IMG/VR virus record: IMGVR_UViG_3300042544_001590
Coordinates: 124,001 to 188,000 of that record
DNA length: 64,000 nt
Direction: 5' to 3' (one strand)
Below are positions 4,508 through 19,475 of the stretch, piece after piece (positions within the stretch are counted from its first letter, which is position 1; every line of letters starts with the position of its first letter). The translations under genes were made by a program, and so were the position numbers. The notes below the pieces were generated by a model. That model did no database searches. It was given only the letters and a program-made list of their open reading frames with translations, and had not been told where the DNA came from.

Positions 4508-5008
4508 TTATTTAGTGAAAATTATCATTTTGTTCACCACATCCTGAAAGTATTTCTCATTTAGGAATGTAAGACCTTCTTTTTCCAAATATTTGTAAAT
4601 CTTGCGAAATGATGGTGGTTTGCGATTGAGGAAAGCCATCTCCAATCCAGAGATGGTTGAGCATTCCCTAATATCGATCAGGTATTCCAGATGTTCCAAA
4701 TCATAATTGGCATCCCAAATCCTGATCTTGAAGATTCGCCGGATTTTAGCCAAAAGCTGGTTGCGGAACTTATCCTTGGTAAGAGCATTGGAAAAGAAAA
4801 TGAAATCCGTGTGGGTATTGTATTTCAGGAATTGTGTCGTGGTCTTTATGAACTCATGGGTGTAGAGTTTCTTGTTATTCCGCTTGGAGAAATCAAAGGT
4901 GGTGATCAATCCAAGGGATTCCAAAAGGATTGCGAAGTTGGTATTCGTATCCCGAAATATCTCATCAATATCGATGATCTTTCTATTTTCAAATTGAATC
5001 CTTGTCAC
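4508..5008 (-). CDS. hypothetical protein
   Basis: 166 aa ORF, 4-nt overlap with upstream gene. Confidence 0.65.
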   Translation of the reverse strand: MTRIQFENRKIIDIDEIFRDTNTNFAILLESLGLITTFDFSKRNNKKLYTHEFIKTTTQFLKYNTHTDFIFFSNALTKDKFRNQLLAKIRRIFKIRIWDANYDLEHLEYLIDIRECSTISGLEMAFLNRKPPSFRKIYKYLEKEGLTFLNEKYFQDVVNKMIIFTK

Positions 5009-5466
5009 AGTTTCAAAATAGCAGGATCACGTTCAATGTCAACAAATCCTTTTGGGATTACGCCAATGCGACAATTTAAAATGCCATTGTAAAATCTCTT
5101 GTCCAGTAAAGCATTACATTTGATCTGCCAAATTAGCTCACTGTATGTCATATGGAATTTTGAGTGACACACCTCTATCACTTCCCTTGAAAAATGCTCA
5201 ATCCCGTATTTCTCAATATCCGATAGCAATTCCTTGGACGATCCCCAATACTTCTCCACATCATTATCCACAAATGAAATGCGATTGCGTGTCTTACCTT
5301 TCAATGGTTTGCGCTTCACGCGCTTCAACAATTGCTTTTTCCCAATGTAAAAACGTCTGCTTCCTTTGTTTTGGATCACATCTGGATGATTGTTGCGGAT
5401 GAGGTAAACGAAGCCCACAACACCTTCCGTATCGGCTGGGAAATTTTTCCATGTGGTTTGCTCCAT
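5005..5466 (-). CDS. GIY-YIG (Seg-like) endonuclease family protein
   Basis: GFVYLI...FYIGKK and YWGSSKEL motifs; start at 5466 supported by TAAATA-N5-ATG. Confidence 0.75.
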   Translation of the reverse strand: MEQTTWKNFPADTEGVVGFVYLIRNNHPDVIQNKGSRRFYIGKKQLLKRVKRKPLKGKTRNRISFVDNDVEKYWGSSKELLSDIEKYGIEHFSREVIEVCHSKFHMTYSELIWQIKCNALLDKRFYNGILNCRIGVIPKGFVDIERDPAILKL

Positions 5467-5729
5467 TTTCCTATTTAGTGGCACGAATCCAGCTATAAAG
5501 CTTATCATAAGCTTTGGTGAGAAAATTAATTTGATTGATTTGTTATCTTGTAATGTTTCTATTTTTATTCTCTTAACAAGTATTAATTATAACGATTTCT
5601 AATTAATATCTGATAATAAGCTGATTGATTTCAATTAATTTTTATTTCTTTTGTTTCTTTCTTTAGTTATCTTTAATCATAGTTAATATCTAATCAAAAA
5701 CTAATAGTAAGAAAATTAATTATAAGGTA

Positions 5730-8845: not shown

Positions 8846-9291
8846 CAGAAAAAAATGCCAAGAAACCACATTATGTTAATTCCAAGCTGTTCAAACAGCA
8901 ATTGGTGGAATACTATGAGACGGGAGCAAATCTGGACGAATTGGGAGTTCATCTGATGAACATTGCAGAGGGTTTGTCATATAAAATTAACTTTATTAGA
9001 TATTCTCAAAGCTGGAAATCTGAAATGATCGGGGATGCAGTTCTGAAAATGTATGCGGCTCTGGAAAAGAAATTGTATAACATCGAATCAGACTTCAACC
9101 CATTCTCATATTTCAACCGCATTGCTTGGAATGCTTTCTGCAACCGCATCAAGAAGGAGAACGGACAACACAAGGGTCTGGAGGACTACAAGGAGATGGT
9201 GTATATGGAAAGCATGAGTGGGCCAGATTCCATGGGACATGTTTACGTGAAACCGAATTTGGAGGGGGATGAATATGATGACAATGATTAA
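8842..9291 (+). CDS. gp55: late-transcription sigma factor (T4 gp55-like)
   Basis: HYVN...NIAEGLS..NFIRYS..EMIGDA...NPFSYF..IAWNAF.NRIKKE pattern; position between UvsW and gp47. Confidence 0.88.
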   Translation: MTEKNAKKPHYVNSKLFKQQLVEYYETGANLDELGVHLMNIAEGLSYKINFIRYSQSWKSEMIGDAVLKMYAALEKKLYNIESDFNPFSYFNRIAWNAFCNRIKKENGQHKGLEDYKEMVYMESMSGPDSMGHVYVKPNLEGDEYDDND

Positions 9292-10303
9292 GAAACCTAA
9301 AATAGCACTATTTTCAGACCTTCATTTGGGTCTGTATGGAAATTCGACAGAGTGGCATGAAATCGCCTTGAAATGGGCTGATTGGATTGTGTCTGATCTG
9401 AAGAAAAAGAAGATTACGGATATATTTTTCCTTGGTGATTTCTTCCACAATCGTTCGGAGATTTCAGTCCAGACAATACATGTTGCATCAGAATTGATTG
9501 CCAAGTTCAAGGATTTCAACCTCTTGATGGTGATAGGAAACCACGATGCGTTCTACAAGAACCGTTCCGATGTCCATAGCTTGGGATTCCTCAAGGGACA
9601 TGATAACATCACCATCATTGATCAGAACTTGGAATTTGATGCATTTAATAAGAAATTGCTATTTGTCCCATGGAATCACGAATTACCCGAAGGTAAATTT
9701 GACTACATCTTTGGTCATTTTGAAATTCAAACATTCCAAATGAACAATTATAAGGTATGTGATCACGGATTCCAAGTCATGGATTTTCTAGCATCCCGAA
9801 CGACTAATGTTTGGAGCGGTCACTTCCACACCAAGAGCATCAAGAAATACAATGAAGGAACGATTCGATATATTGGCAACACATTCCACCACGATTTCAA
9901 CGATTGTGGAGATGACAAGGGTTATCACATTCTGAATCTGGAAGATGATTCCGTCGAATTTGTGAAAAATACGGTGTCTCCTGAATTTATTAAGATTCCC
10001 CTGTCCAAGATCAAGGACTACAAAGCGGAGGATGTGGAAGGAAACATAATCAAGCTAATCATTGACAAAGATGTGGAAGATGATAAGGTGGAGAAGTTCA
10101 AGATTTACCTGTCCAACTTTGCTCCTTTCCGTCTTACCACGGAATACAACGTGGCAACAAAGACAATTGGGGATGTTGAACAGGTGGATTCCATTGATAT
10201 TGTTGGTATGTTTGACGAATTTTATGAACAACTCAAGCTGGACGACGAACAATTAGTAAGAGTGAAGAAAATTAACGATGAATTGTATGACAAATGTAAG
10301 TAA
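9284..10303 (+). CDS. gp47: recombination endonuclease subunit gp47 (Mre11/SbcD-like)
   Basis: Metallophosphoesterase motifs SDLHLG, GDFFH, GNHD, GHFH. Confidence 0.92.
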   Translation: MIKKPKIALFSDLHLGLYGNSTEWHEIALKWADWIVSDLKKKKITDIFFLGDFFHNRSEISVQTIHVASELIAKFKDFNLLMVIGNHDAFYKNRSDVHSLGFLKGHDNITIIDQNLEFDAFNKKLLFVPWNHELPEGKFDYIFGHFEIQTFQMNNYKVCDHGFQVMDFLASRTTNVWSGHFHTKSIKKYNEGTIRYIGNTFHHDFNDCGDDKGYHILNLEDDSVEFVKNTVSPEFIKIPLSKIKDYKAEDVEGNIIKLIIDKDVEDDKVEKFKIYLSNFAPFRLTTEYNVATKTIGDVEQVDSIDIVGMFDEFYEQLKLDDEQLVRVKKINDELYDKCK

Positions 10304-10541
10304 TCCCCTGTTAAGAGCTTTCAAACATACAATAAAAATATCGGAACGCGAAAGAGATGTTCCCATGGAGGAATATATACACAAATATATATTAATGCAT
10401 GGAAGTTGTCTCATAATGGATAGAATCTTGAAAAGAGTTGGCGATAAGGATTCATTAACATTTGATGTTACATATATTTTCAATGATAATCCAACAGATG
10501 ATAAAATTGTCGAAGCTTTGATAAAAATAAACGCATTATAA
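10287..10541 (+). CDS. small accessory protein
   Basis: Starts at the ATG inside junction copy 1. Confidence 0.55.
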   Translation: MTNVSNPLLRAFKHTIKISERERDVPMEEYIHKYILMHGSCLIMDRILKRVGDKDSLTFDVTYIFNDNPTDDKIVEALIKINAL

Positions 10542-10554
10542 TGAAACGAATTGT

Positions 10555-10791
10555 ATGAAAAGTGTAAGTGATTTTGATTTGAAAAAGGTTTTTGTCGAAG
10601 AGGTCACTGAGCGTATTGGTCAACATGTTTTGGCAAGTAAGGTCAGAGATGCTACGATAGAAGATATTGAAAAAGAATTGGAAAATCATAAAAATGGTAA
10701 ATGTGGACATTCTATTGTTGAAGACACATATGGGTGGTTGTATGATTTTAGGGGGTGTGCTATTTGTGGAAAGGGACTTGGAACTGTATGA
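10555..10791 (+). CDS. small Cys/His (Zn-binding-like) accessory protein
   Basis: CGH...CAICGKG; starts at the ATG inside junction copy 2. Confidence 0.6.
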   Translation: MKSVSDFDLKKVFVEEVTERIGQHVLASKVRDATIEDIEKELENHKNGKCGHSIVEDTYGWLYDFRGCAICGKGLGTV

Positions 10792-11708
10792 AAAAAATAA
10801 TTTATAAAAAATTAAAAGGTCAAAATTTCCTTAGCATTGGCAACGATCAGATTGTGATTGATTTTCAATCTGGTTTCAATCTGATCACTGCTAAGAATAT
10901 CGACAACCCTGATCGCCAAAACGGGGGAGGCAAGTCAACATTGGCGGAACTTTTCTATTTCGCCCAATTTGGTAAAACCATCCGTGAAATTAAAAAGGAT
11001 TTCATCATCAACAATATCACCAAAGGAAAAGGTGCTATTGAATTGACGTTTGACGTAGAGACTGATAATGACACTCAGACATACACAATCAAGCGACAAC
11101 TCAAACCAAGCTCTGTAACTCTCTTAAAAGGAGATGAAGATATCACTAAGGATTCAATTGCCAATACTGATAAATTCATCTGTGATCTGATCGGTTCCAA
11201 TCCTGTGATCTGCCGTAGTTGTGATATTCTATCTCTTTCCGATAACATCCCGTTCATGGCGAAGAAACCAGAGGAGAAGCGCAAGTTTATCAATGATATT
11301 TTCTCTTTGGAAGTCTTTGGTAAGATGAGTAATGAATTGAAGAATCTGATTCGTGATAATAAAGGGGAGATGAACATTTCCACTGCAAGATTGGAAGAAC
11401 TTAACCACACTCTGGAAACGCTGAATGATCAGCAAGCGGATTATCTGAAGAAAGTCCAAGAACGGGAAGCAATCCTCGAACAAAAGCGTAAGGAGATCCA
11501 AGAGAAGATCGACGAAACGGAGGAAAAGATTGCTAAAATATCCATAACGGATGTCTCAACAATACAATTGGAGCAAGAGAAGTATCATGAAGCTTGGAGA
11601 AAATTGGATGGGAAGATCGGTCATGTGAACGATGCGATTTCATCCAAGGAGACTTTGAGAAAGTTGAAGGTGAAAGAAATTGAACAAATTGAGAAAGTAA
11701 CAAAATGA
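10788..11708 (+). CDS. gp46: gp46 (Rad50/SbcC-like) N-terminal half
   Basis: GQNFLSIG, Walker A QNGGGKS, Q-loop region then coiled coil; ends EKVTK-stop. Confidence 0.9.
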   Translation: MKKIIYKKLKGQNFLSIGNDQIVIDFQSGFNLITAKNIDNPDRQNGGGKSTLAELFYFAQFGKTIREIKKDFIINNITKGKGAIELTFDVETDNDTQTYTIKRQLKPSSVTLLKGDEDITKDSIANTDKFICDLIGSNPVICRSCDILSLSDNIPFMAKKPEEKRKFINDIFSLEVFGKMSNELKNLIRDNKGEMNISTARLEELNHTLETLNDQQADYLKKVQEREAILEQKRKEIQEKIDETEEKIAKISITDVSTIQLEQEKYHEAWRKLDGKIGHVNDAISSKETLRKLKVKEIEQIEKVTK

Positions 11709-12031
11709 ACACGGAATGTGAAAATTTATCTGGAAGTATAGATATTGGAGAATACCAGAAAATGTTGGCAAGTGTCCCCAAAGCAGCTAAAGAATGTGGG
11801 ATGATTCAACATGAGGATGGATTGTATAAAATGTGGGTTGATTGTAAAGTGATTGATAAATTCACCAAAAACAAATTGTTTGGGGGTAGAAAATATTATT
11901 TTGTTCTCAATATCATGGGAATAACCAAAGAAATTCAAGTGGATGAAAATAATTACTACAATCAATCAGAGATGAATAGAATACATATGTATTCTGAAGA
12001 CCGTAAAACATGGTTCCCAACCAGACAATAA
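11705..12031 (+). CDS. inserted ORF splitting gp46; paralogue of 18603..18935
   Basis: 61 of 72 C-terminal residues identical to the 18603 protein; many DNA differences are synonymous. Confidence 0.8.
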   Translation: MNTECENLSGSIDIGEYQKMLASVPKAAKECGMIQHEDGLYKMWVDCKVIDKFTKNKLFGGRKYYFVLNIMGITKEIQVDENNYYNQSEMNRIHMYSEDRKTWFPTRQ

Positions 12032-12033
12032 AA

Positions 12034-12906
12034 ATGATTAAATGCGACAAATGCCTCCAAGATATTCCCCATACTCATGTGGAACATCTGGAGAAGATGA
12101 AAGAACAATATCAATCGGAATTGGATGATATTGTCAAGGAAATTGATGAATTGAAAGAACAAAAATCTCAATTCCATTCGAAAAAAGAAAAGGTTCAAGC
12201 TAAGGTAGCTGAGTTTCAGGATCAAATCAATGAATCGAAAGTCACCAAACAAAAATTGGAAGGTCTGGAAAACAGTCTCAAGCAATACAAAGATTCTTTG
12301 AACAACTTGAAGCTGGAAGAATTACCTAAACCAAATTTTGAGGAAAGTATTCAAAATACTTGGGTGAGACAAAATACTGAGAATGATAATTTCCGAATGC
12401 TTAAACAGAAATCAGATGATTATGAAATCTGTAAGTTCGTTCTTGGTGAAGAAGGTGTTCGTAGCTTTGTGGTGAAGAGACTTCTTTCCATGATGAACGC
12501 AAGCATTCAGCAATACATCAACGATCTTGGTATGTCCATCCGTTGTAAATTTGACGAATACTTTGATGAGCAGCTTTCCAATGACAAAGGTAAGGAGATT
12601 TCCTACTGGAACTTGAGCGGTGGTGAACGTAGAACAGTTGACCTCGCGTGTGCGTGGGCGTTCAAGGACTTGAAAAGGAAGATTTCGGGAGTGTCATCCA
12701 ATGTGGAATTTTTTGATGAATACCTCGATTCCACCCTAGATTCCACAGGAATTGATAAGTTGATCGAACAAATCAAACAACGAATTGATAGATTTGATCT
12801 TTCTGTTTATGTGATTTCCCATAGAACAGAAACCGCCAAACATGTTACAGGATCAGTAATTGAACTCGCTAAAGAAGGTGGAGTTACTAGGAGAATTTAT
12901 AATTGA
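12034..12906 (+). CDS. gp46: gp46 (Rad50/SbcC-like) C-terminal half
   Basis: Begins MIK-CDKC (zinc hook), coiled coil, LSGGE signature, FFDE Walker B, VISH H-loop. Confidence 0.9.
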   Translation: MIKCDKCLQDIPHTHVEHLEKMKEQYQSELDDIVKEIDELKEQKSQFHSKKEKVQAKVAEFQDQINESKVTKQKLEGLENSLKQYKDSLNNLKLEELPKPNFEESIQNTWVRQNTENDNFRMLKQKSDDYEICKFVLGEEGVRSFVVKRLLSMMNASIQQYINDLGMSIRCKFDEYFDEQLSNDKGKEISYWNLSGGERRTVDLACAWAFKDLKRKISGVSSNVEFFDEYLDSTLDSTGIDKLIEQIKQRIDRFDLSVYVISHRTETAKHVTGSVIELAKEGGVTRRIYN

Positions 12907-12930
12907 CAAATGGAAAAACATGAATAAATC
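12903..12930 (+). promoter_or_regulatory. TTGACA-N16-TAAATC promoter, 5 nt before ATG
   Basis: Direct motif match. Confidence 0.55.
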
Positions 12931-12935
12931 TCTTC

Positions 12936-14129
12936 ATGTTTCAAAAGTCTCCGTTTCCATCTCCTTTTGCTAAGAATCCCTATGCTGTAAAAAACACCAC
13001 CCAAGAACCCCCTAAAAAGGGCAACACTTATTTAAACTTCGGAGCCGATAGAGGGGGTTGTGGACAATGGCGCATAGGTTGGCCTGAATTACATATCAAT
13101 ATGTGTGGATTGGGGGATTCTTCCACCATTACCAAGATGGTTCTCAACAAGGATTGGTATCGGGATGTGAAAACCATCAAGCTCCAACGCCAATGTTCGA
13201 CTCAACAGAAAGAATTCTTTAAATTTCTCAAGAGTATCCAACCAGAATGCGGTTTCAAAATCATCTATGAAGTGGATGATGTGGTATTCCACGAAGAGAT
13301 TCCCGATTACAATTCCTACAAACACGCATTTGCTTCCGATGAGATTCGCCAGAACTGCGTGGACATGATGAACATGGCAGATGAGGTGACGGTGACATGT
13401 AAATACATGCGCGATCTTTTCATTGAGAAAACAGGACAACAAAAGACTTCCGTGATTCCCAACTTCCCTCCCGAATGGTGGATTGGTTCTCATTACAATT
13501 ATGGGAAGGTTATCCAGAACTTTGATAGGAACAAGAAAAAGCCGCGCATCCTCTATTCAGGATCGGGAGCGCACTTTGATGTGAAGAATGTCACGGGACA
13601 GCAAGATGATTTTTCCCATGTCCTGAAATTCATCATCGATAACCGTCATAAATATCAGTTCATTTTCATTGGTGCTTACCCACCTCCCCTGCATCCATAT
13701 ATCGAAAGTAAGGAAATAGAATTTCATCCATGGCAATCCCTGATGGATTATCCGAAGTTCATTGCTTCTTTGAATCCCCAATTGCTTCTTGCACCCCTGA
13801 AGGATATTCCGTTCAACAGGTCAAAGTCTGATATCAAATATATTGAGGGAGCTTGTTTGGGTATCCCCTGTATGGTTCAGGATATGGTGACGTATCAGGA
13901 TGCTCCCGATTTCCTAAAATTCACGGATTCCACCGATTTGGAACAGAAAGTGGAGACAATTCTGAATTGGAAGAACCGTTTCAAGTATTACAAGCTGGTT
14001 CCCGAGTTGAGAAAGCTTGGGGAAAGCAGATTCCTTGAAAGACCGGAGAATATCGGAGCGTTTATGGAAGCCCTGAATACACCATTCGGTGATCCTTCTC
14101 GCAGATTCATGAAATATTGGAATGATTAA
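12936..14129 (+). CDS. glycosyltransferase (GT-B-like, phage type)
   Basis: IIYEVDD, ADEVTVT, LAPLKDIPFNRSKSDIKYIEG patterns. Confidence 0.75.
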   Translation: MFQKSPFPSPFAKNPYAVKNTTQEPPKKGNTYLNFGADRGGCGQWRIGWPELHINMCGLGDSSTITKMVLNKDWYRDVKTIKLQRQCSTQQKEFFKFLKSIQPECGFKIIYEVDDVVFHEEIPDYNSYKHAFASDEIRQNCVDMMNMADEVTVTCKYMRDLFIEKTGQQKTSVIPNFPPEWWIGSHYNYGKVIQNFDRNKKKPRILYSGSGAHFDVKNVTGQQDDFSHVLKFIIDNRHKYQFIFIGAYPPPLHPYIESKEIEFHPWQSLMDYPKFIASLNPQLLLAPLKDIPFNRSKSDIKYIEGACLGIPCMVQDMVTYQDAPDFLKFTDSTDLEQKVETILNWKNRFKYYKLVPELRKLGESRFLERPENIGAFMEALNTPFGDPSRRFMKYWND

Positions 14130-14407
14130 TTCTTACCAAATTGGGAATATTGAGCGAGCGTTGGGCGGAGCCTTTCAAACATACCTTTTAAGTTTTCAAA
14201 GCTATTCATATTCGAAGGATTATTGAAAAAGGCTTTTTTATTGTTTTGGTAAAAATTGATAGTTCCTTTTAGATAATTTTCAATATACGAACAAAGTTCA
14301 TGCGCCTTTGCCTTGACTTTTTCTGTCTGTGGGTCATAATCATCGTAGGATGATTCCATATCAAGATTTTCGTAAATCATACTCAAGTCTTTGAAATAAT
14401 TATCCAT
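14126..14407 (-). CDS. hypothetical late protein
   Basis: TAAATA-N5-ATG; N-terminus YFKDLSMIYEN. Confidence 0.65.
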   Translation of the reverse strand: MDNYFKDLSMIYENLDMESSYDDYDPQTEKVKAKAHELCSYIENYLKGTINFYQNNKKAFFNNPSNMNSFENLKGMFERLRPTLAQYSQFGKN

Positions 14408-14442
14408 AACAATATTTAGTGAATGATGTGGTGAATTATAAT

Positions 14443-15843
14443 TTATCTACTTATTTCTTCCCAGTCTATTGAGCCATGAACAAATTCTGTGTTTGTGCTT
14501 GCTGTTACAGCTAATGTTAATTCATAAGGTGTGCTTGTAAAGCTATTTCTCTCAAGTTGAAACTTGAACAGAGCTTCTTTAAGAATGTCTATCGATGTTG
14601 CTCCCTGAGCATTGGAAGTAAAATATCCTGATGCTAATACTCTACCTCCCGATAGACTGGTTCCATCTAGTTTATATTCCACGGAGGAATTAACTCCTGC
14701 ATCAGTCCATGTACCGCCAGAAGTCGTTCCAGATGCAACCACTTGCCACTTGTAGATACCCGTATTGACCCCCATTAGCGACAACGCAGTTAGAATTACA
14801 ATACCATCTAATCTTGTTGATTTTAACCGTATGGAAACGATAGGATAAAAGGTTCCTGCTGTTGTAAGAGCTTTGGGAGCAGTTATTGTCGTACCTGCTG
14901 CTTGTTGCAATCCTCTTAACTCATAACCACCCTCCGAAATAACTGTACTACAAACTTGTTTTAATTTACTTGAACCTGAAGTTGCAGCTTTATTTTCAAT
15001 TTCATATCTAAGCGGCAGTGACCCCGTTGTAATGTATGTCGTGTCAATCAAGTTAGCGTGATGGAAGTAATGACAAGGTACAAACTGACCATTGATAACA
15101 AATCCTGTTCTCACAGAGCCTAATCCGAGCCATTCGATGTCAATCCATAGAATTTGAGCCTTTGTAATATCAAGTGTGATACCAGATGAACCCGACCCAT
15201 CCAAGCGATCTACATTCCATTGCGATTGTGGGACACGAGTTTCAGTGAGCGAGCCTGATGTAATGCTACGTTCAACCACGTAAAGGGTATTGTCATCCAA
15301 TTCCAAGTAGATACCATTATCAGTGCCAAAATACCCAACACGTTGTCTAAGATTTGTTTTAGCTTGGTTAAAAGTAAATGTGCTTAAAATTTGTAAACTT
15401 TTACCGGGTTGATAAGCAAACACTTTTGTGGTTTCACGATATATTTTAGAACCGCTTAGAGCATCAACTTTCAATTCAACAATACCTTGCGTTTGGATAA
15501 ATTGTGCAGAAGCGGAGGTTGTTGTAGTTCCTCCTGATAATGTTGACCAGAGATTATTATCTGCATACCTATGAGACGAATCGAAAAGAGTCAAAGGACT
15601 TGATGTTCTCGTTCTTCCAAATGCATCACTCGCCATGTTGTAATTACCGCTAAAGTTGGTCGAAGTGTCATCGATATTTTTCACCAAAACCGCATATTTC
15701 GGATATTCGACTATTTGAGTAGAGCCAAAAGATGGATCGGACACTGCCGATGTTGCTGGGAATCTGGCATCATTTACGATCTCAACAAATTTTCCGCTTT
15801 CGGTATTTGCGGCATTTGTCCACACTTTAGTATTAATTGCCAT
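14443..15843 (-). CDS. probable virion structural protein (beta-rich)
   Basis: DAFGRTRTSSPLTLFDSSHRYADN pattern of a family recurrent in large myoviruses; Ser/Thr/Gly-rich; TAAATA-N5-ATG. Confidence 0.65.
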   Translation of the reverse strand: MAINTKVWTNAANTESGKFVEIVNDARFPATSAVSDPSFGSTQIVEYPKYAVLVKNIDDTSTNFSGNYNMASDAFGRTRTSSPLTLFDSSHRYADNNLWSTLSGGTTTTSASAQFIQTQGIVELKVDALSGSKIYRETTKVFAYQPGKSLQILSTFTFNQAKTNLRQRVGYFGTDNGIYLELDDNTLYVVERSITSGSLTETRVPQSQWNVDRLDGSGSSGITLDITKAQILWIDIEWLGLGSVRTGFVINGQFVPCHYFHHANLIDTTYITTGSLPLRYEIENKAATSGSSKLKQVCSTVISEGGYELRGLQQAAGTTITAPKALTTAGTFYPIVSIRLKSTRLDGIVILTALSLMGVNTGIYKWQVVASGTTSGGTWTDAGVNSSVEYKLDGTSLSGGRVLASGYFTSNAQGATSIDILKEALFKFQLERNSFTSTPYELTLAVTASTNTEFVHGSIDWEEISR

Positions 15844-15879
15844 ATTTTTATTTAATCATTCGATGAAGTTAATATTGTA

Positions 15880-15907
15880 TTGACTTTGGCATTTTATGGT
15901 TTATCAT
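15880..15907 (+). promoter_or_regulatory. TTGACT-N16-TATCAT promoter, 6 nt before polymerase ATG
   Basis: Direct motif match. Confidence 0.6.
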
Positions 15908-15913
15908 TTTTTT

Positions 15914-18418
15914 ATGTATAGAAATTGTGTGTATGATCAAAAAAATCGTAAAATTTTTATTTGGACTTGGGACGAAAACGGGGAGCGAATCCGCGAAGAA
16001 CATGATTTCAAGCCATACATCCTTTTGGAAGATAAAAAGGGAACGGAGAAGTCCATTTATGGCACGGCTCTCAAAAAACGCGAATTTCAATCCAGCTATG
16101 ACAGGAATAATTTCGTCAAGGATAGTAATATCAAGCGAATTTACGAGAACCTACCACCATATCAACAATTCCTAATTGACAATTATTGGTCGGTTTGTGA
16201 GAATGATAATTTCTCCCAATATCCCCTGAAGGTGGCTTTTTTTGATATTGAATGTCCCGGAATATCCTTTCCAGAACCAGAATTGGCGGAATCAGTGATT
16301 AACCTGATCACGATCTATAATTCTGAGTCCAAGATGTATCATGTATTTGGTTTGAAAGATTTCCACACCATGAGAGATGATGTGAAGTATTATCGGTGTA
16401 AATCCGAAGAGGACTTGTTGAAATCGTTTATCAAATACCTTCAAAAGGAAGGTTTTGATGTTCTCAGTGGATGGAACATAGCAGCATTTGATGTTCCTTA
16501 TCTTGTAAATCGAATCACTTTCCAATTGGGAAAGGAATGGGCTGATAAGCTGTCCCCAACGGGTAGGATTTACGAAAAGACCAATCCAAATGGTAAATTT
16601 GGGATGCCTTCCAAGGAGTATGTGATTGAAGGGCTATCAATTTTGGATTATTATGTGATTTATCAGAAGTTCAATTTGGAGAAACAGGAATCGTATAAAT
16701 TGGATAATATTGGGGAAGTTGAATTGGGAATCAATAAGATTCAACACGAAGGCAATCTATGGGAACTCATGAAAAATGATTGGAACACTTACACGGATTA
16801 CAATATACGTGATGTGGAAATCGTTGTGGGGTTAGATCAGAAAAAGGGGTATATTAATCTAATCCGATTCCTTGCATATACTGGATTATGTGATCTGGAA
16901 AGCGCGATTAGAACACTCCCGGCAATGAACGGGGCAATTGCCATACGCGCCCGTATGCGGGGGGAATACATTCCTACGTTCATTCGTCCCGTGACGGACT
17001 ACCGCGCCCCCGGTGGGTATGTGGCAGAGCCAAAAATAGGTTTTGCGGAGAATATCGTATCCTTTGATGCCAACTCTCTGTATCCATCGGTTATGATTTC
17101 CCTGAATCTCTCCCCCGAAACGAAAATCGGAAGGGTTGAGAAGGATGGAGATAAAGTGAAAATCCATCATGTATCAGGTAGATTGTTTGAGATGACTCCT
17201 GAGAACTTCAAGAAATTTATTGATGAGGAGCAAGCGGCATTAACTAAAGCAGGATTTCTCTTCTCTCAGAAGAAACGTGGTCTGGTTCCCGAATTCCTTG
17301 ACAATCTTTACACCAAACGGAAGGAAATGAAGAGTAAGATGATGGAATGCCGCAAGAAGGGGGATAAAGAAGGGGAGCAGAAATTCGACAGCATCCAATA
17401 TGCTTACAAAATCCATCTCAATTCCCTCTATGGATATATGCTCAACAAATACGCTCCCCTTGGAGATGAGGATATTGGAACATCGGTGACACTGACGGGA
17501 CAAGCGGTAATCAAGAAGAGTAATGATCTGTTTCAGGATTATGTGAGGGAAAATCTACCGGATTTGTCAGAGTCCTTATTGCAACAAAGTTGTGTTTACG
17601 GTGATACGGATAGCTTTTTCGTTTCCTTGAAAATGTTTGGCATGGATGCTAAATCTGATGAATTTTATGAATTATGTGAAGATATTGAAAATTATATCAA
17701 TGAACGAATCATTGAATGGGCTAGAAAAGCTCTGAGAAGCACTGATCCTCGCTTCGTATTCAAGCGGGAAACCATCTGTGACGCGGGAATCTTCATTGGT
17801 AAGAAATATTATGTCCTTCATGTTCTGGACGATGAGGGAACCAAGGTGGATAAGTTCAAGTATCGGGGGGTTGATGTCGTAAAAACCACAATGCCCAAGA
17901 AGGTGAAGCCTTATGTCAAGAAAGTCATTGAACATATGATCATGTCCCAATCTTTGAAGGAAACCAATGACATGTTCAACGAGGCTTACGAGGAATTCAA
18001 GAATCTGTCCATTGCGGAGATTTCCAAGATTTCGGGTATGAACAACTTTGCGGAATATTCGGCTAGGTGTAATGGTATGAACACCGTGAAAGGTATGCCA
18101 TCCCATCTCAAAGCTGCTTATTTTCATGACATGATCATGGAACAGAACGGATGGGGTTCCAAATACGAGAAATTCAAGACGGGGGATAAGGTTCGCATGG
18201 TTTATGTTAAGAAACCCAACAAATACAATTTGGAAATGATCGGATTCAAGGGTGGTTGGCCGGAAGAATTTGATAACATTTTCACTGTTGACTTTGAAAA
18301 GATGTTTAGTAAAGTCTTCTATGCAGCGATTGAGAGATTTTACGAAGCGGTCGGTTGGAAACTCAGAAAACCTAGCGAAAATCTCACCGTAGAATTGGAC
18401 GACTTGTTTGGCGAATGA
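15914..18418 (+). CDS. gp43: family B DNA polymerase (T4 gp43-like)
   Basis: Exo I FFDIE, FDANSLYPS, KIHLNSLYG, YGDTDS motifs; uninterrupted. Confidence 0.96.
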   Translation: MYRNCVYDQKNRKIFIWTWDENGERIREEHDFKPYILLEDKKGTEKSIYGTALKKREFQSSYDRNNFVKDSNIKRIYENLPPYQQFLIDNYWSVCENDNFSQYPLKVAFFDIECPGISFPEPELAESVINLITIYNSESKMYHVFGLKDFHTMRDDVKYYRCKSEEDLLKSFIKYLQKEGFDVLSGWNIAAFDVPYLVNRITFQLGKEWADKLSPTGRIYEKTNPNGKFGMPSKEYVIEGLSILDYYVIYQKFNLEKQESYKLDNIGEVELGINKIQHEGNLWELMKNDWNTYTDYNIRDVEIVVGLDQKKGYINLIRFLAYTGLCDLESAIRTLPAMNGAIAIRARMRGEYIPTFIRPVTDYRAPGGYVAEPKIGFAENIVSFDANSLYPSVMISLNLSPETKIGRVEKDGDKVKIHHVSGRLFEMTPENFKKFIDEEQAALTKAGFLFSQKKRGLVPEFLDNLYTKRKEMKSKMMECRKKGDKEGEQKFDSIQYAYKIHLNSLYGYMLNKYAPLGDEDIGTSVTLTGQAVIKKSNDLFQDYVRENLPDLSESLLQQSCVYGDTDSFFVSLKMFGMDAKSDEFYELCEDIENYINERIIEWARKALRSTDPRFVFKRETICDAGIFIGKKYYVLHVLDDEGTKVDKFKYRGVDVVKTTMPKKVKPYVKKVIEHMIMSQSLKETNDMFNEAYEEFKNLSIAEISKISGMNNFAEYSARCNGMNTVKGMPSHLKAAYFHDMIMEQNGWGSKYEKFKTGDKVRMVYVKKPNKYNLEMIGFKGGWPEEFDNIFTVDFEKMFSKVFYAAIERFYEAVGWKLRKPSENLTVELDDLFGE

Positions 18419-18606
18419 TAACACAATTAAATCCCACGATACCAGTAGTCACCCCAAAAGGGAAGGGTTACGCACATCTGGTCATAGATTATTCCCAAGA
18501 ACATGATTTATATTGGGTTTGTTTTATAAATGATACGAAAGAATGCTGGACATTTGGGAATTCTGAGATAAGAATAGATGACAACATAACATTACAGAGA
18601 AAATGA
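18415..18606 (+). CDS. small conserved phage protein
   Basis: QLNP.IP..TPKG.G.AH..IDY..EH.L.WVCF pattern recurrent in phages. Confidence 0.7.
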   Translation: MITQLNPTIPVVTPKGKGYAHLVIDYSQEHDLYWVCFINDTKECWTFGNSEIRIDDNITLQRK

Positions 18607-18935
18607 AAATTGAAACGAATTATCAGTGCATTTCTGGAGTATGTGATGCAAGTCATTTTGATCACTATTCCAAAGACTCAATCCAATTGGCACAAGAACG
18701 AGGACATTGGCCATACGAAGATGGTCTATATAAAATGTGGGTTGATTGTAAAGTGATTGATAAATTCACTAAGAACAAATTGTTCGGGGGTAGAAAATAT
18801 TATTTCGTTTTGAATCTTATGGGAACGACGAAAGAACTTCAAGTCAATCAAAGCAATTACTATAATCAATCTGAGGTGAATGAGATACATGTGTATTCCG
18901 AAGACGGTAAAACATGGTTCCCAACCAGAATATAA
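18603..18935 (+). CDS. hypothetical protein, paralogue of the gp46 insert
   Basis: Shared 72-aa C-terminal core with 11705..12031. Confidence 0.8.
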   Translation: MKIETNYQCISGVCDASHFDHYSKDSIQLAQERGHWPYEDGLYKMWVDCKVIDKFTKNKLFGGRKYYFVLNLMGTTKELQVNQSNYYNQSEVNEIHVYSEDGKTWFPTRI

Positions 18936-18938
18936 ATT

Positions 18939-19475
18939 ATGATGAACGAATATAAAATAATGTGGGAGCAATTCTTGAAAGAATCTCCATGGGCGACTTC
19001 ACCGACACCCAATTCATTCAATGATAGAATGGAAAATTTCGACACCAATATTATCGGATCATATGATAATATTGGTAATTTTGAAGATTATGAGGTTTAT
19101 CAAAATGATAACGGGAACGAATTATTCTTCATGCTTGGGGATGATTTTGTTGCTTATTATCGATACGAGATTGATGATAGAAATGTTTGTCACACTAAAA
19201 TGACTTGGAATCACAAGAACCACCAAGGAACGTTTCTCAAGTTGTTTGGGGAATACTTGATACCGAAATTTAAAATAATTGAATCTGATGATATGATGAC
19301 ACCTCAAGCATTTTCCATGTGGCAGAAGTTGATCGGACATTATACGGATTATAAATATTACGTTAAAACCGGAGACGAACTTATACCAATTGACAATCCA
19401 TATGAAGTGCATAATTATTCAGAGAAATTGGCGATAAACGGAAAATCAAACTCAACATTTTTAGTAACTGTATGA
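18939..19475 (+). CDS. hypothetical protein
   Basis: 178 aa; N-terminus MWEQFLKE-SP. Confidence 0.65.
   Translation: MMNEYKIMWEQFLKESPWATSPTPNSFNDRMENFDTNIIGSYDNIGNFEDYEVYQNDNGNELFFMLGDDFVAYYRYEIDDRNVCHTKMTWNHKNHQGTFLKLFGEYLIPKFKIIESDDMMTPQAFSMWQKLIGHYTDYKYYVKTGDELIPIDNPYEVHNYSEKLAINGKSNSTFLVTV

What the first reader, a model, noticed from the sequence alone, without database searches (positions are those of the whole stretch)
11705..18935. Mobile mini-gene family: constant 72-aa C-terminal core with variable N-terminus, at two unrelated loci
Seen: 11813-12031 and 18717-18935 are collinear 219-nt segments with a 41-nt perfect match, 61/72 identical residues (first 33 identical) and many synonymous changes. 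The roughly 36-38 aa N-termini are barely alignable. One copy sits inside gp46 and the other downstream of DNA polymerase. No transposase, nuclease or RT motif is visible. Inference: both copies are under selection, and the gene spreads by an unknown route into replication/recombination loci. It may be an anti-defence or exclusion factor, or a minimal selfish element.
Basis: partly seen in the sequence, partly recalled or inferred. Interest (0 to 1): 0.6.

Follow-up and report, generated by a model that had tools for sequence, protein, structure and literature searches.

The report
Small phage gene splitting Rad50-like gp46
A small, previously undescribed gene family of uncultured T4-like phages, predicted to fold as a small OB-type beta-barrel, occurs twice in this genome. 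One copy sits in the middle of the Rad50-like repair gene gp46 and cuts it into two pieces that both still look functional, but nothing shows that the gene can move by itself.

Summary
Window 11813-12032 and 18717-18936 are 85% identical in DNA. They form the C-terminal 72 codons of two ORFs, 11705-12031 (108 aa) and 18603-18935 (110 aa), and evolve under strong purifying selection (core dN/dS about 0.12).

The window belongs to a complete 207-kb T4-like phage that has exactly these two copies. The family is rare and metagenome-only: about 15 clusters at 50% identity among 1.8 billion representatives, with no Pfam, PHROG, PADLOC, PDB-sequence or GenBank-phage match.

AlphaFold models (pLDDT 82 and 86) give an N-terminal helix followed by an OB-like barrel. 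The core is basic and rich in aromatics, and the N-terminal tail is acidic.

In relatives the gene occupies several different slots: gp47|gene|gp46, inside gp46, after NAMPT, and others.

Copy 1 splits gp46 two residues before its CxxC zinc hook. The same split occurs in three diverged lineages, and both halves stay under selection.

At sites B and C the gene's ATG overlaps the upstream stop (ATGA), and at all three sites a downstream ATG follows its stop within 2-3 nt. It encodes no nuclease, transposase or end repeats.

I read it as a non-autonomous accessory gene cassette. Its function (nucleic-acid binding, an Mre11-Rad50 partner, or anti-defence) remains inferred.

The parts
9269..10303 (+). 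gp47 (Mre11/SbcD-like nuclease subunit). In relatives the mini-gene starts inside its 3' end (site A).
   Evidence: 82-88% identical to the 339-340-aa genes of L009 and L004. The L009 gene carries Pfam Metallophos, as does the 339-aa gene of the Logan contig, and in all three relatives this gene directly precedes the mini-gene.
10278..10791 (+). Two small ORFs (87 aa at 10278-10541; 78 aa at 10555-10791) that fill the gp47-gp46 gap in this genome, where relatives carry the mini-gene.
   Evidence: No homologue in L004, L005 or L009. No Pfam family. Very low GC3, 0.24-0.25.
10788..11708 (+). gp46 N half: Walker-A ATPase lobe plus the ascending coiled coil. The longest ORF starts at GTG 10755; ATG 10788 aligns with the start of intact gp46.
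   Evidence: AAA_23 E 3.8e-13; phrog_77 (SbcC-like) positions 291-561, E 6e-44. 81% identical to residues 1-304 of the intact 598-aa gp46 of L009. dN/dS 0.055 against L007.
11705..12031 (+). Mini-gene copy 1 (108 aa), inside gp46. Its ATG overlaps the gp46N stop (ATGA). Its N-terminal 36 aa are aberrant for the family.
   Evidence: AlphaFold pLDDT 85.6: helix 14-30 plus an OB-like barrel.
12034..12906 (+). gp46 C half. It begins MIKCDKC, that is, with the CxxC zinc hook, followed by the descending coiled coil and the signature/Walker-B lobe. An alternative upstream ATG at 12010 lies inside the mini-gene.
   Evidence: phrog_77 positions 626-951, E 5e-38. The relatives L005 and L015 start at the same MIKCDKC. 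dN/dS 0.10 against L005.
11813..12032 (+). Conserved core repeat, copy 1.
   Evidence: Repeat family D1; codon analysis.
15896..18418 (+). Family-B DNA polymerase (gp43), upstream neighbour of the copy-2 block.
   Evidence: 77-84% identical to the polymerases of L004 and L005, which carry DNA_pol_B_exo1 and DNA_pol_B.
18415..18606 (+). 63-aa ORF between the polymerase and copy 2. Its stop overlaps the copy-2 ATG.
   Evidence: 87% identical to the 65-aa ORF of L005, where it is followed by tRNA-Asn instead of the mini-gene. Homology between the two genomes breaks at the copy-2 ATG.
18603..18935 (+). Mini-gene copy 2 (110 aa), with the family-typical N-terminus.
   Evidence: AlphaFold pLDDT 82.3. 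A 4-nt deletion allele (window 18696-18699) exists in an otherwise identical NCBI contig.
18717..18936 (+). Conserved core repeat, copy 2.
   Evidence: Repeat family D1.
18939..19475 (+). 178-aa ORF directly after copy 2. Together with orf63 and copy 2 it is absent from L004 (polymerase followed by the orf85 homologue).
   Evidence: Only a weak phrog_25121 match. Low GC3, 0.35.

Best explanation
The two segments are paralogues of a small accessory gene family restricted, as far as public data show, to uncultured T4-like phages.

The protein: it has an acidic, poorly conserved N-terminal tail with a helix, followed by a 70-aa basic, aromatic-rich five-strand barrel with OB-fold topology (predicted). 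It has no enzyme motif. I infer that it binds nucleic acid, most likely single-stranded DNA, or another phage or host protein, with the variable tail setting partner specificity.

Mobility: the gene does not move by itself. It behaves as a single-gene cassette embedded in operons. In the gp46-internal and polymerase-downstream contexts its ATG overlaps the stop of the upstream gene (ATGA), and in all three contexts its stop is followed within 2-3 nt by an ATG that starts the downstream gene. The phage's own recombination machinery can therefore insert it without polar effects (inferred).

History: in an ancestor of the window's lineage the cassette landed inside gp46, two residues before the CxxC zinc hook. 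This converted gp46 into two genes whose products must reassemble through their antiparallel coiled coils. The arrangement was then inherited and kept under selection. Later the gene was duplicated, or re-acquired from a close relative, downstream of the DNA polymerase. The N-terminal 36 codons of the gp46-internal copy then diverged almost to randomness, or were swapped with those of a distant allele.
For: Shown:
- Two copies only in the complete genome.
- Core dN/dS of 0.01-0.12 in the pairs whose dS could be estimated.
- The family is about 15 small-protein clusters among 1.84 billion representatives, with no hit in Pfam, PHROGs, PADLOC, PDB sequences or GenBank phages.
- AlphaFold pLDDT 82 and 86, with the order b1-b2-b3-helix-b4-b5.
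- Fold searches return almost only OB proteins: DUF2500 (3rd4/3q6c), LEF-3 ssDNA-binding OB, SSBs, PriB, S12/S17, polymerase III alpha OB. The best VIA Z is 5.8.
- Core pI is 8-9.4 in 15 of the 19 aligned members (range 5.3-9.4), with 11-16 aromatic residues. In 14 of the 15 members that have one, the N tail has pI 4-6.
- Contexts: gp47|gene|gp46 in L009/L010; gp47|gene|orf|gp46 in L004 and a Logan contig; gp46N|gene|gp46C in the window, L005-L008 and L015; NAMPT|gene in three diverged clusters; others.
- Junctions: ATGA overlap at sites B and C, and stop + 2-3 nt + ATGAT. The string AGAAAATAAAATATGAT is shared between site A (L004) and site B (L005).
- The split conserves gp46 length exactly: 13 residues lie between KLK and KCDKC, with G-A replaced by M-I.
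- Both gp46 halves have dN/dS of 0.06-0.13 with dS above 1, the same as intact gp46 at 0.12.
- Copy 2 versus L005 is uniformly 77-78% identical along the whole gene. Copy 1 versus copy 2 is 85% in the core and about 40% in the N-terminus.
- The small ORFs have lower GC3 (0.24-0.35) than most core genes (0.43-0.49; gp46C 0.375).
- No intron or RNA family, and no promoter or terminator at the flanks.

Precedent for split but working genes in T4-like phages: nrdA/mobE, 39-60/mobA, 43A/43B (PMC2988022).
Against: - The OB assignment rests on predicted models and weak structural scores (Z 5.8, Foldseek E at least 0.007), so a generic small barrel cannot be excluded.
- Nucleic-acid binding is inferred from composition only.
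- No donor or recipient pair, and no empty-site versus filled-site polymorphism within one population, was seen, so the mechanism of movement is wholly inferred.
- Whether genomes with the gp46-internal copy other than the window's also keep a gp47-proximal copy is unknown, because the contigs are too short. The order of events is therefore not fixed.
- Reassembly of split gp46 is untested.
Confidence: 0.55

Rival explanations
1. The protein is a third, OB-fold subunit or regulator of the phage Mre11-Rad50 (gp47/gp46) complex. Its gene belongs between, or inside, the genes of its partners so that the proteins are made in fixed ratios.
For: In six diverged lineages the gene lies between gp47 and gp46 or between the two gp46 halves. 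Where DNA was held, the start and stop signals overlap or abut those of its neighbours. The fold is OB-like, as in ssDNA-binding partners of end-resection machines. T4 itself keeps two small coupled ORFs, 46.1 and 46.2, in the same gap.
Against: Three other diverged clusters sit after NAMPT, one sits in a SprT-like region, and two sit before a DegT aminotransferase. Copy 2, which carries the canonical N-terminus in this genome, lies after the polymerase. There is no similarity to T4 46.1 or 46.2. Neighbourhood alone is weak evidence.
Confidence: 0.17
2. The protein is an anti-defence or superinfection-exclusion factor. The variable acidic N-tail targets different host or competitor proteins, and the two paralogues cover two targets.
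For: It is small, AT-rich, patchily distributed, relocating, and has a fast-evolving N-terminus. Relatives place it beside NAD-salvage genes and Gad2, or near Acb3 and NADAR. A frameshifted allele of copy 2 in an otherwise identical genome shows that the gene is dispensable in the short term.
Against: No similarity to any PADLOC model or any known anti-defence family. The conserved part is the basic barrel, not the tail. Gene neighbourhood in plastic regions of T4-like genomes is weak evidence.
Confidence: 0.18
3. It is a minimal autonomous selfish element (a new kind of homing gene) that promotes its own insertion.
For: It is inserted precisely into a conserved, essential gene at a functionally critical motif, as the homing endonucleases mobE and mobA are (PMC2988022). 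It occupies three sites within one narrow clade.
Against: No nuclease, recombinase or RT domain or motif, and the predicted OB-like fold is not a known nuclease fold. The positions are stable over saturated synonymous divergence. Only two copies exist in 207 kb. There are no terminal repeats. A SegE-like GIY-YIG gene exists 6 kb away and could supply breaks in trans.
Confidence: 0.06

Closest known systems
Genes-in-pieces made by free-standing homing endonuclease genes in T4-like phages: nrdA split by mobE in Aeh1, topoisomerase 39/60 split by mobA in T4, gene 43A/43B in phage 25 and 44RR (PMC2988022)
   Same: A conserved replication or repair gene is cut into two ORFs at a functionally critical place by an inserted small ORF. 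No coding sequence is lost, both halves are kept under selection, and the inserted ORF overlaps the upstream half.
   Different: The inserted ORF here has no GIY-YIG, HNH or other nuclease domain and is predicted to be an OB-like barrel. The gene that is split is gp46 (Rad50/SbcC-like), cut two residues before the zinc hook. I found no paper describing such a split in two full-text searches.
PeSL-flanked mobile cassettes that shuffle small ORFs in the hyperplastic regions of T4-type phages (PMC2839356, PMC4122927)
   Same: Single small ORFs of unknown function, AT-rich, present or absent or relocated between close relatives without any transposase.
   Different: No early promoter plus stem-loop flanks the gene. 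It is instead joined to its neighbours by overlapping or abutting stop and start codons, and it lies inside core-gene operons.
Small OB-fold proteins: DUF2500 (3q6c, 3rd4), baculovirus LEF-3 OB domain, bacterial and phage SSBs, PriB
   Same: Predicted b1-b2-b3-helix-b4-b5 barrel of about 70 residues with a basic, aromatic-rich surface. An acidic flexible tail accompanies it, as in SSB, gp32 and gp2.5.
   Different: No sequence similarity. Structural scores are only Z 4-5.8. The tail is N-terminal, not C-terminal. No binding data exist.
T4 genes 46.1 (DUF5487) and 46.2
   Same: Small ORFs of unknown function in the gp47-gp46 gap, overlapping both neighbours. This is the same slot as the family's commonest position in the window's clade.
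   Different: No detectable homology (hhalign probability below 1%).

Membership tests
Free-standing homing endonuclease gene | Encodes a nuclease domain (GIY-YIG, HNH, LAGLIDADG, PD-(D/E)XK, EDxHD) | tested here: not met
   No Pfam, PHROG or PADLOC hit for any of 19 members. The predicted fold is OB-like.
Free-standing homing endonuclease gene | Inserted in or next to a conserved gene, with presence/absence differences between close relatives | tested here: met
   Inside gp46 in three lineages and absent from gp46 in three others. After the polymerase only in the window's strain.
Intein or group I intron | In-frame insertion with splicing blocks, or a structured self-splicing RNA | tested here: not met
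   The three ORFs use three different frames, with a stop after gp46N. No Rfam match at E up to 1 apart from one chance snoRNA-like hit.
Transposon or IS element | Transposase, terminal inverted repeats, target-site duplication | tested here: not met
   No transposase. No inverted or direct repeats at the ends beyond the ATGA/ATGAT start-stop contexts.
PeSL mobile cassette | Flanking early promoter plus stem-loop terminator | tested here: not met
   No terminator-like site, and no promoter-like site on the coding strand, at 11705, 12031, 18603 or 18935.
Gene-in-pieces (split gene retaining function) | Two ORFs collinear with the halves of an intact homologue, with no loss of sequence | tested here: met
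   Alignment to the intact 598-aa gp46 of L004 and L009; the junction lies two residues before CDKC.
Gene-in-pieces (split gene retaining function) | Both halves maintained by purifying selection | tested here: met
   dN/dS 0.055-0.13 with dS above 1.
Gene-in-pieces (split gene retaining function) | The halves assemble into an active enzyme | not testable with these tools
   Needs co-expression and an ATPase/nuclease assay.
OB-fold nucleic-acid-binding proteins | Five-strand closed barrel with a helix between strands 3 and 4 | tested here: inconclusive
   The predicted topology fits and the hit lists are dominated by OB proteins. The best scores, however, are Z 5.8 and Foldseek E 0.007-0.012, below the level the tool calls trustworthy.
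OB-fold nucleic-acid-binding proteins | Binds ssDNA, RNA or oligosaccharide | not testable with these tools
   Only composition is available: a basic, aromatic-rich core.

The most novel reading that the evidence does not exclude
The OB-like protein is a dedicated partner of the phage Mre11-Rad50 machine. Insertion of its gene at the zinc hook created a natural three-piece complex (gp46N + gp46C + OB protein, with gp47). This would be the first natural Rad50 split at the hook and a new accessory subunit. Alternatively, the cassette is a new kind of selfish insert that survives inside essential genes because it carries its own stop and restart signals.
Probability: 0.12. Interest if true: 0.75.

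Novelty: new variant of a known kind. Interest (0 to 1): 0.45.

Why it matters
- It adds an undescribed small-protein family, with a confident predicted fold, to the dark matter of T4-like phages.
- It gives a clean natural example of an essential SMC-like repair ATPase (Rad50/SbcC-type gp46) cut exactly at its zinc hook by a gene that is not a homing endonuclease. The arrangement has been stable through long divergence.
- It is a ready-made natural experiment on whether covalent continuity through the Rad50 hook matters.
- It shows that gene splitting in phages does not need an endonuclease in the insert itself.
- The stop/restart architecture of the cassette suggests how small genes can colonise operons, and even the interior of coding regions, without polar damage.

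Tried and rejected
- **Complex prediction.** gp47 plus copy 2 gave no answer (score 0.00, controls not run). This is no evidence either way.
- **Gene conversion behind the 41-nt perfect match.** Rejected as unnecessary: shuffling gives P = 0.18.
- **Group I intron or other RNA.** Nothing found.
- **PeSL-type flanks.** None found.
- **PD-(D/E)XK reading of 'EDG...DCK'.** I considered this from the sequence and dropped it after the models showed an all-beta OB-like barrel and no nuclease-fold hits.
- **Homology to T4 46.1, 46.2 or to the window's own orf87.** None.
- **Three long repeat proteins in the profile search** (RTX, fn3, RHS; 1424-2697 aa). Treated as spurious multi-stretch matches.
- **Wider collections.** The IMG/VR scans returned only a contig identical to the window across the shared proteins. 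The scan of JGI metagenome contigs returned nothing.
- **Sequencing runs.** I did not try it another way, so no read-level test of empty-site variants or of expression was made.
- No genetic code other than table 11 was needed.


Full report
**Setting.** The window is bases 124001-188000 of a 207,489-bp virus record with direct terminal repeats, rated complete. The genes around the finding are those of a T4-like replication/recombination module, in this order:
- a helicase;
- gp47 (Mre11/SbcD-like);
- gp46 (Rad50/SbcC-like, phrog_77);
- a 397-aa glycosyltransferase-like gene;
- a family-B DNA polymerase;
- UvsX.

No cultured phage is close: the best GenBank match of the gp46 C half is 27% identical.

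**The observation.**
- The repeat finder returns one long family, 11813-12032 and 18717-18936, at 85% identity.
- These are the last 72 codons of two ORFs, 11705-12031 (108 aa) and 18603-18935 (110 aa).
- Codon by codon there are 13 synonymous and 11 replacement differences. The first 33 residues are identical, and the longest perfect run is 41 nt.
- That run is not unusual once codon degeneracy is allowed for (P = 0.18).
- A six-frame search of the whole genome finds these two copies and no third.

**Selection.**
- Nei-Gojobori estimates for the core give dN/dS 0.12 between the two window copies (0.014 in the first 33 codons) and 0.04-0.10 against the relatives L005 and L004. Synonymous sites are near saturation.
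- The N-terminal 36-38 codons behave differently. Copy 2 against L005 has dN 0.12 with saturated synonymous sites, so it is constrained.
- Copy 1 against every other member has pN about 0.6, near random. It still keeps the invariant T, SG, E and G positions of the close family.
- In the core the two window copies are each other's nearest relatives (85% nt, against 78-80% to L005).
- In the N-terminus copy 2 groups with L005 and L015, and copy 1 is the outlier.
- The simplest history is a duplication, or re-acquisition from a close relative, followed by release or replacement of the N-terminus of the gp46-internal copy.

**The family.**
- The word-indexed search finds six close proteins of 104-114 aa.
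- A profile search of 1.84 billion representatives finds 18 hits. Three are long RTX, fn3 or RHS repeat proteins that I treat as spurious. One is a frameshifted fragment of copy 2 itself (P0019). That leaves 14 small-protein clusters of 68-149 aa.
- Four of these consist of the core alone. The others carry N-terminal extensions of 17-77 residues.
- No member matches any Pfam, PHROG or PADLOC model or any PDB sequence.
- tblastn of three members against 50,697 GenBank phage records finds nothing.
- IMG/VR holds only a contig identical to the window across the shared proteins.

**Fold.**
- AlphaFold2 with the 19-sequence alignment gives pLDDT 82.3 for copy 2 and 85.6 for copy 1, and 88-94 through the core.
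- The order of elements is a disordered N-terminus, a helix, then a long bent strand, two strands, a short helix, and two further strands (the last only 2 residues). This is the OB-fold order.
- Foldseek against the PDB and BFVD, VIA-align against 48,161 chains, and the ESM Atlas all return lists dominated by OB domains: DUF2500, LEF-3, SSBs, PriB, ribosomal S12/S17, and the OB domains of polymerase III alpha and of ligases.
- The scores are only weak: best Z 5.8, best Foldseek E 0.007.
- In most members the core is basic (pI 8-9.4) and has 11-16 aromatic residues, and the N tail is acidic (pI 4-6).
- I take the fold as OB-like with moderate confidence. Nucleic-acid binding is an inference.

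**Where the gene sits.**
- Site A: immediately after gp47 and before an intact 598-602-aa gp46. This is seen in L009/L010 directly, and in L004 and a Logan contig with one extra small ORF.
- Site B: inside gp46, in the window, in L005-L008 and in L015.
- Site C: after the polymerase and a 63-aa ORF, only in the window's strain (L003, L025).
  - L005 has the 63-aa homologue followed by tRNA-Asn, with homology breaking at the copy-2 ATG.
  - L004 goes from the polymerase straight to the homologue of orf85.
- In more distant clusters the gene follows NAMPT in three diverged lineages, lies in a SprT-like accessory region, or precedes a DegT aminotransferase.
- In the window, site A is filled by two unrelated ORFs with very low GC3.
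- In T4 itself the same gap holds 46.2 and 46.1, both overlapping their neighbours and unrelated to this family.
- The gene has therefore relocated several times, but each position is stable within its clade.

**The split of gp46.**
- Intact gp46 reads ...KLKQNEIKAISSVDGAKCDKCLQ (L004).
- The split versions read ...KLKTKEIEQIEKVI-stop and MIKCDKCLQ... (L005). The spacing between KLK and KCDKC is 13 residues in both.
- The cut therefore falls two residues before the CxxC zinc hook at the apex of the coiled coil, and nothing is lost.
- The same junction is present in three lineages whose gp46 halves are only 58-86% identical, with saturated synonymous sites and dN/dS 0.055-0.13. Intact gp46 has 0.12.
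- The split is thus old, inherited and compatible with function.
- That the two halves reassemble through the antiparallel coiled coil is an inference, drawn from the general architecture of Rad50/SMC proteins.

**Cassette ends.**
- At sites B and C the ATG of the mini-gene overlaps the stop of the upstream ORF (ATGA). At site A the start lies inside the 3' end of gp47.
- At all three sites the stop is followed after 2-3 nt by ATGAT, the start of the next ORF.
- The string AGAAAATAAAATATGAT is shared between L004 (site A, followed by an unrelated 93-aa ORF) and L005 (site B, followed by gp46C).
- The unit that moved therefore seems to include the restart codon. This explains how an insertion in mid-gene could leave a translatable C half.
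- The ends carry no inverted or direct repeats beyond these start-stop contexts, and no promoter or terminator. There is no RNA family.
- The small ORFs have lower GC3 than most of the core genes, as is usual for laterally exchanged accessory genes.
- One SegE-like GIY-YIG gene lies 6 kb upstream (window 5005-5508, minus strand). It could in principle provide breaks, but nothing links it to these sites.

**Dispensability.** An NCBI contig (L025) is identical to the window over 5.5 kb, apart from a run of N, except for a 4-nt deletion at window 18696-18699. The deletion frameshifts copy 2 after codon 31. If real, it shows that copy 2 can be lost in the short term. That fits an accessory role, or redundancy with copy 1.

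**Verdict.**
- The sequence observation is confirmed.
It is not supported in calling the gene a self-mobile element.
- The most noteworthy result is the ancient, clean split of the Rad50-like gp46 at its zinc hook by an insert that is not an endonuclease. This is a new variant of the genes-in-pieces arrangements known from T4-like phages (PMC2988022).
- Function remains open. My ranking is:
  - a nucleic-acid-binding accessory protein of unspecified partner, within the best explanation (0.55);
  - an anti-defence factor (0.18);
  - an Mre11-Rad50 partner (0.17);
  - an autonomous selfish element (0.06).

**Not done.** The one complex prediction gave no verdict.

Noticed in passing
window 14443-15843 (-): A 466-aa virion structural protein gene (phrog_1645, E 6.5e-141) lies on the opposite strand between the glycosyltransferase-like gene and the DNA polymerase. 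The relatives L004, L005 and L009 lack it at this place. A structural gene inside the replication module is unusual.
   Followed up: partly
window 5005-5508 (-): A SegE-like GIY-YIG homing endonuclease gene (PF19835, E 3e-19). A second GIY-YIG gene lies outside the window at genome 15395-15679. L009/L010 carry two SegE-like fragments at the corresponding place.
   Followed up: partly
window 18696-18699; L025 3001-3329: An NCBI assembly contig (GCA_046463975.1) is identical over 5.5 kb, apart from a run of N, except for a 4-nt deletion (GAAC) that frameshifts mini-gene copy 2. It is either a natural null allele or an assembly error.
   Followed up: yes
L005 6697-6769: A tRNA-Asn (GTT) follows the homologue of orf63 in the relative L005, exactly where the window has copy 2. 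The 64-kb window has no tRNA at all.
   Followed up: yes
window 10278-10791: Two ORFs (87 and 78 aa) with GC3 of only 0.24-0.25 fill the gp47-gp46 gap. They have no homologue in the relatives fetched and no family match. T4 has two unrelated small ORFs (87 and 68 aa) in the same gap.
   Followed up: partly
L004 399-4107; L012 2238-7659: Relatives carry known or suspected counter-defence genes near the family members: NADAR/DUF4326 and Acb3 in L004, and NAMPT plus an NMNAT-Nudix-like pair and Gad2 in L012-L014.
   Followed up: no
window 18939-19475: The 178-aa ORF after copy 2 has only a weak match to a 'virion structural protein' PHROG (E 1.6e-4). It is absent from L004, so it appears to have arrived with, or next to, copy 2.
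   Followed up: no
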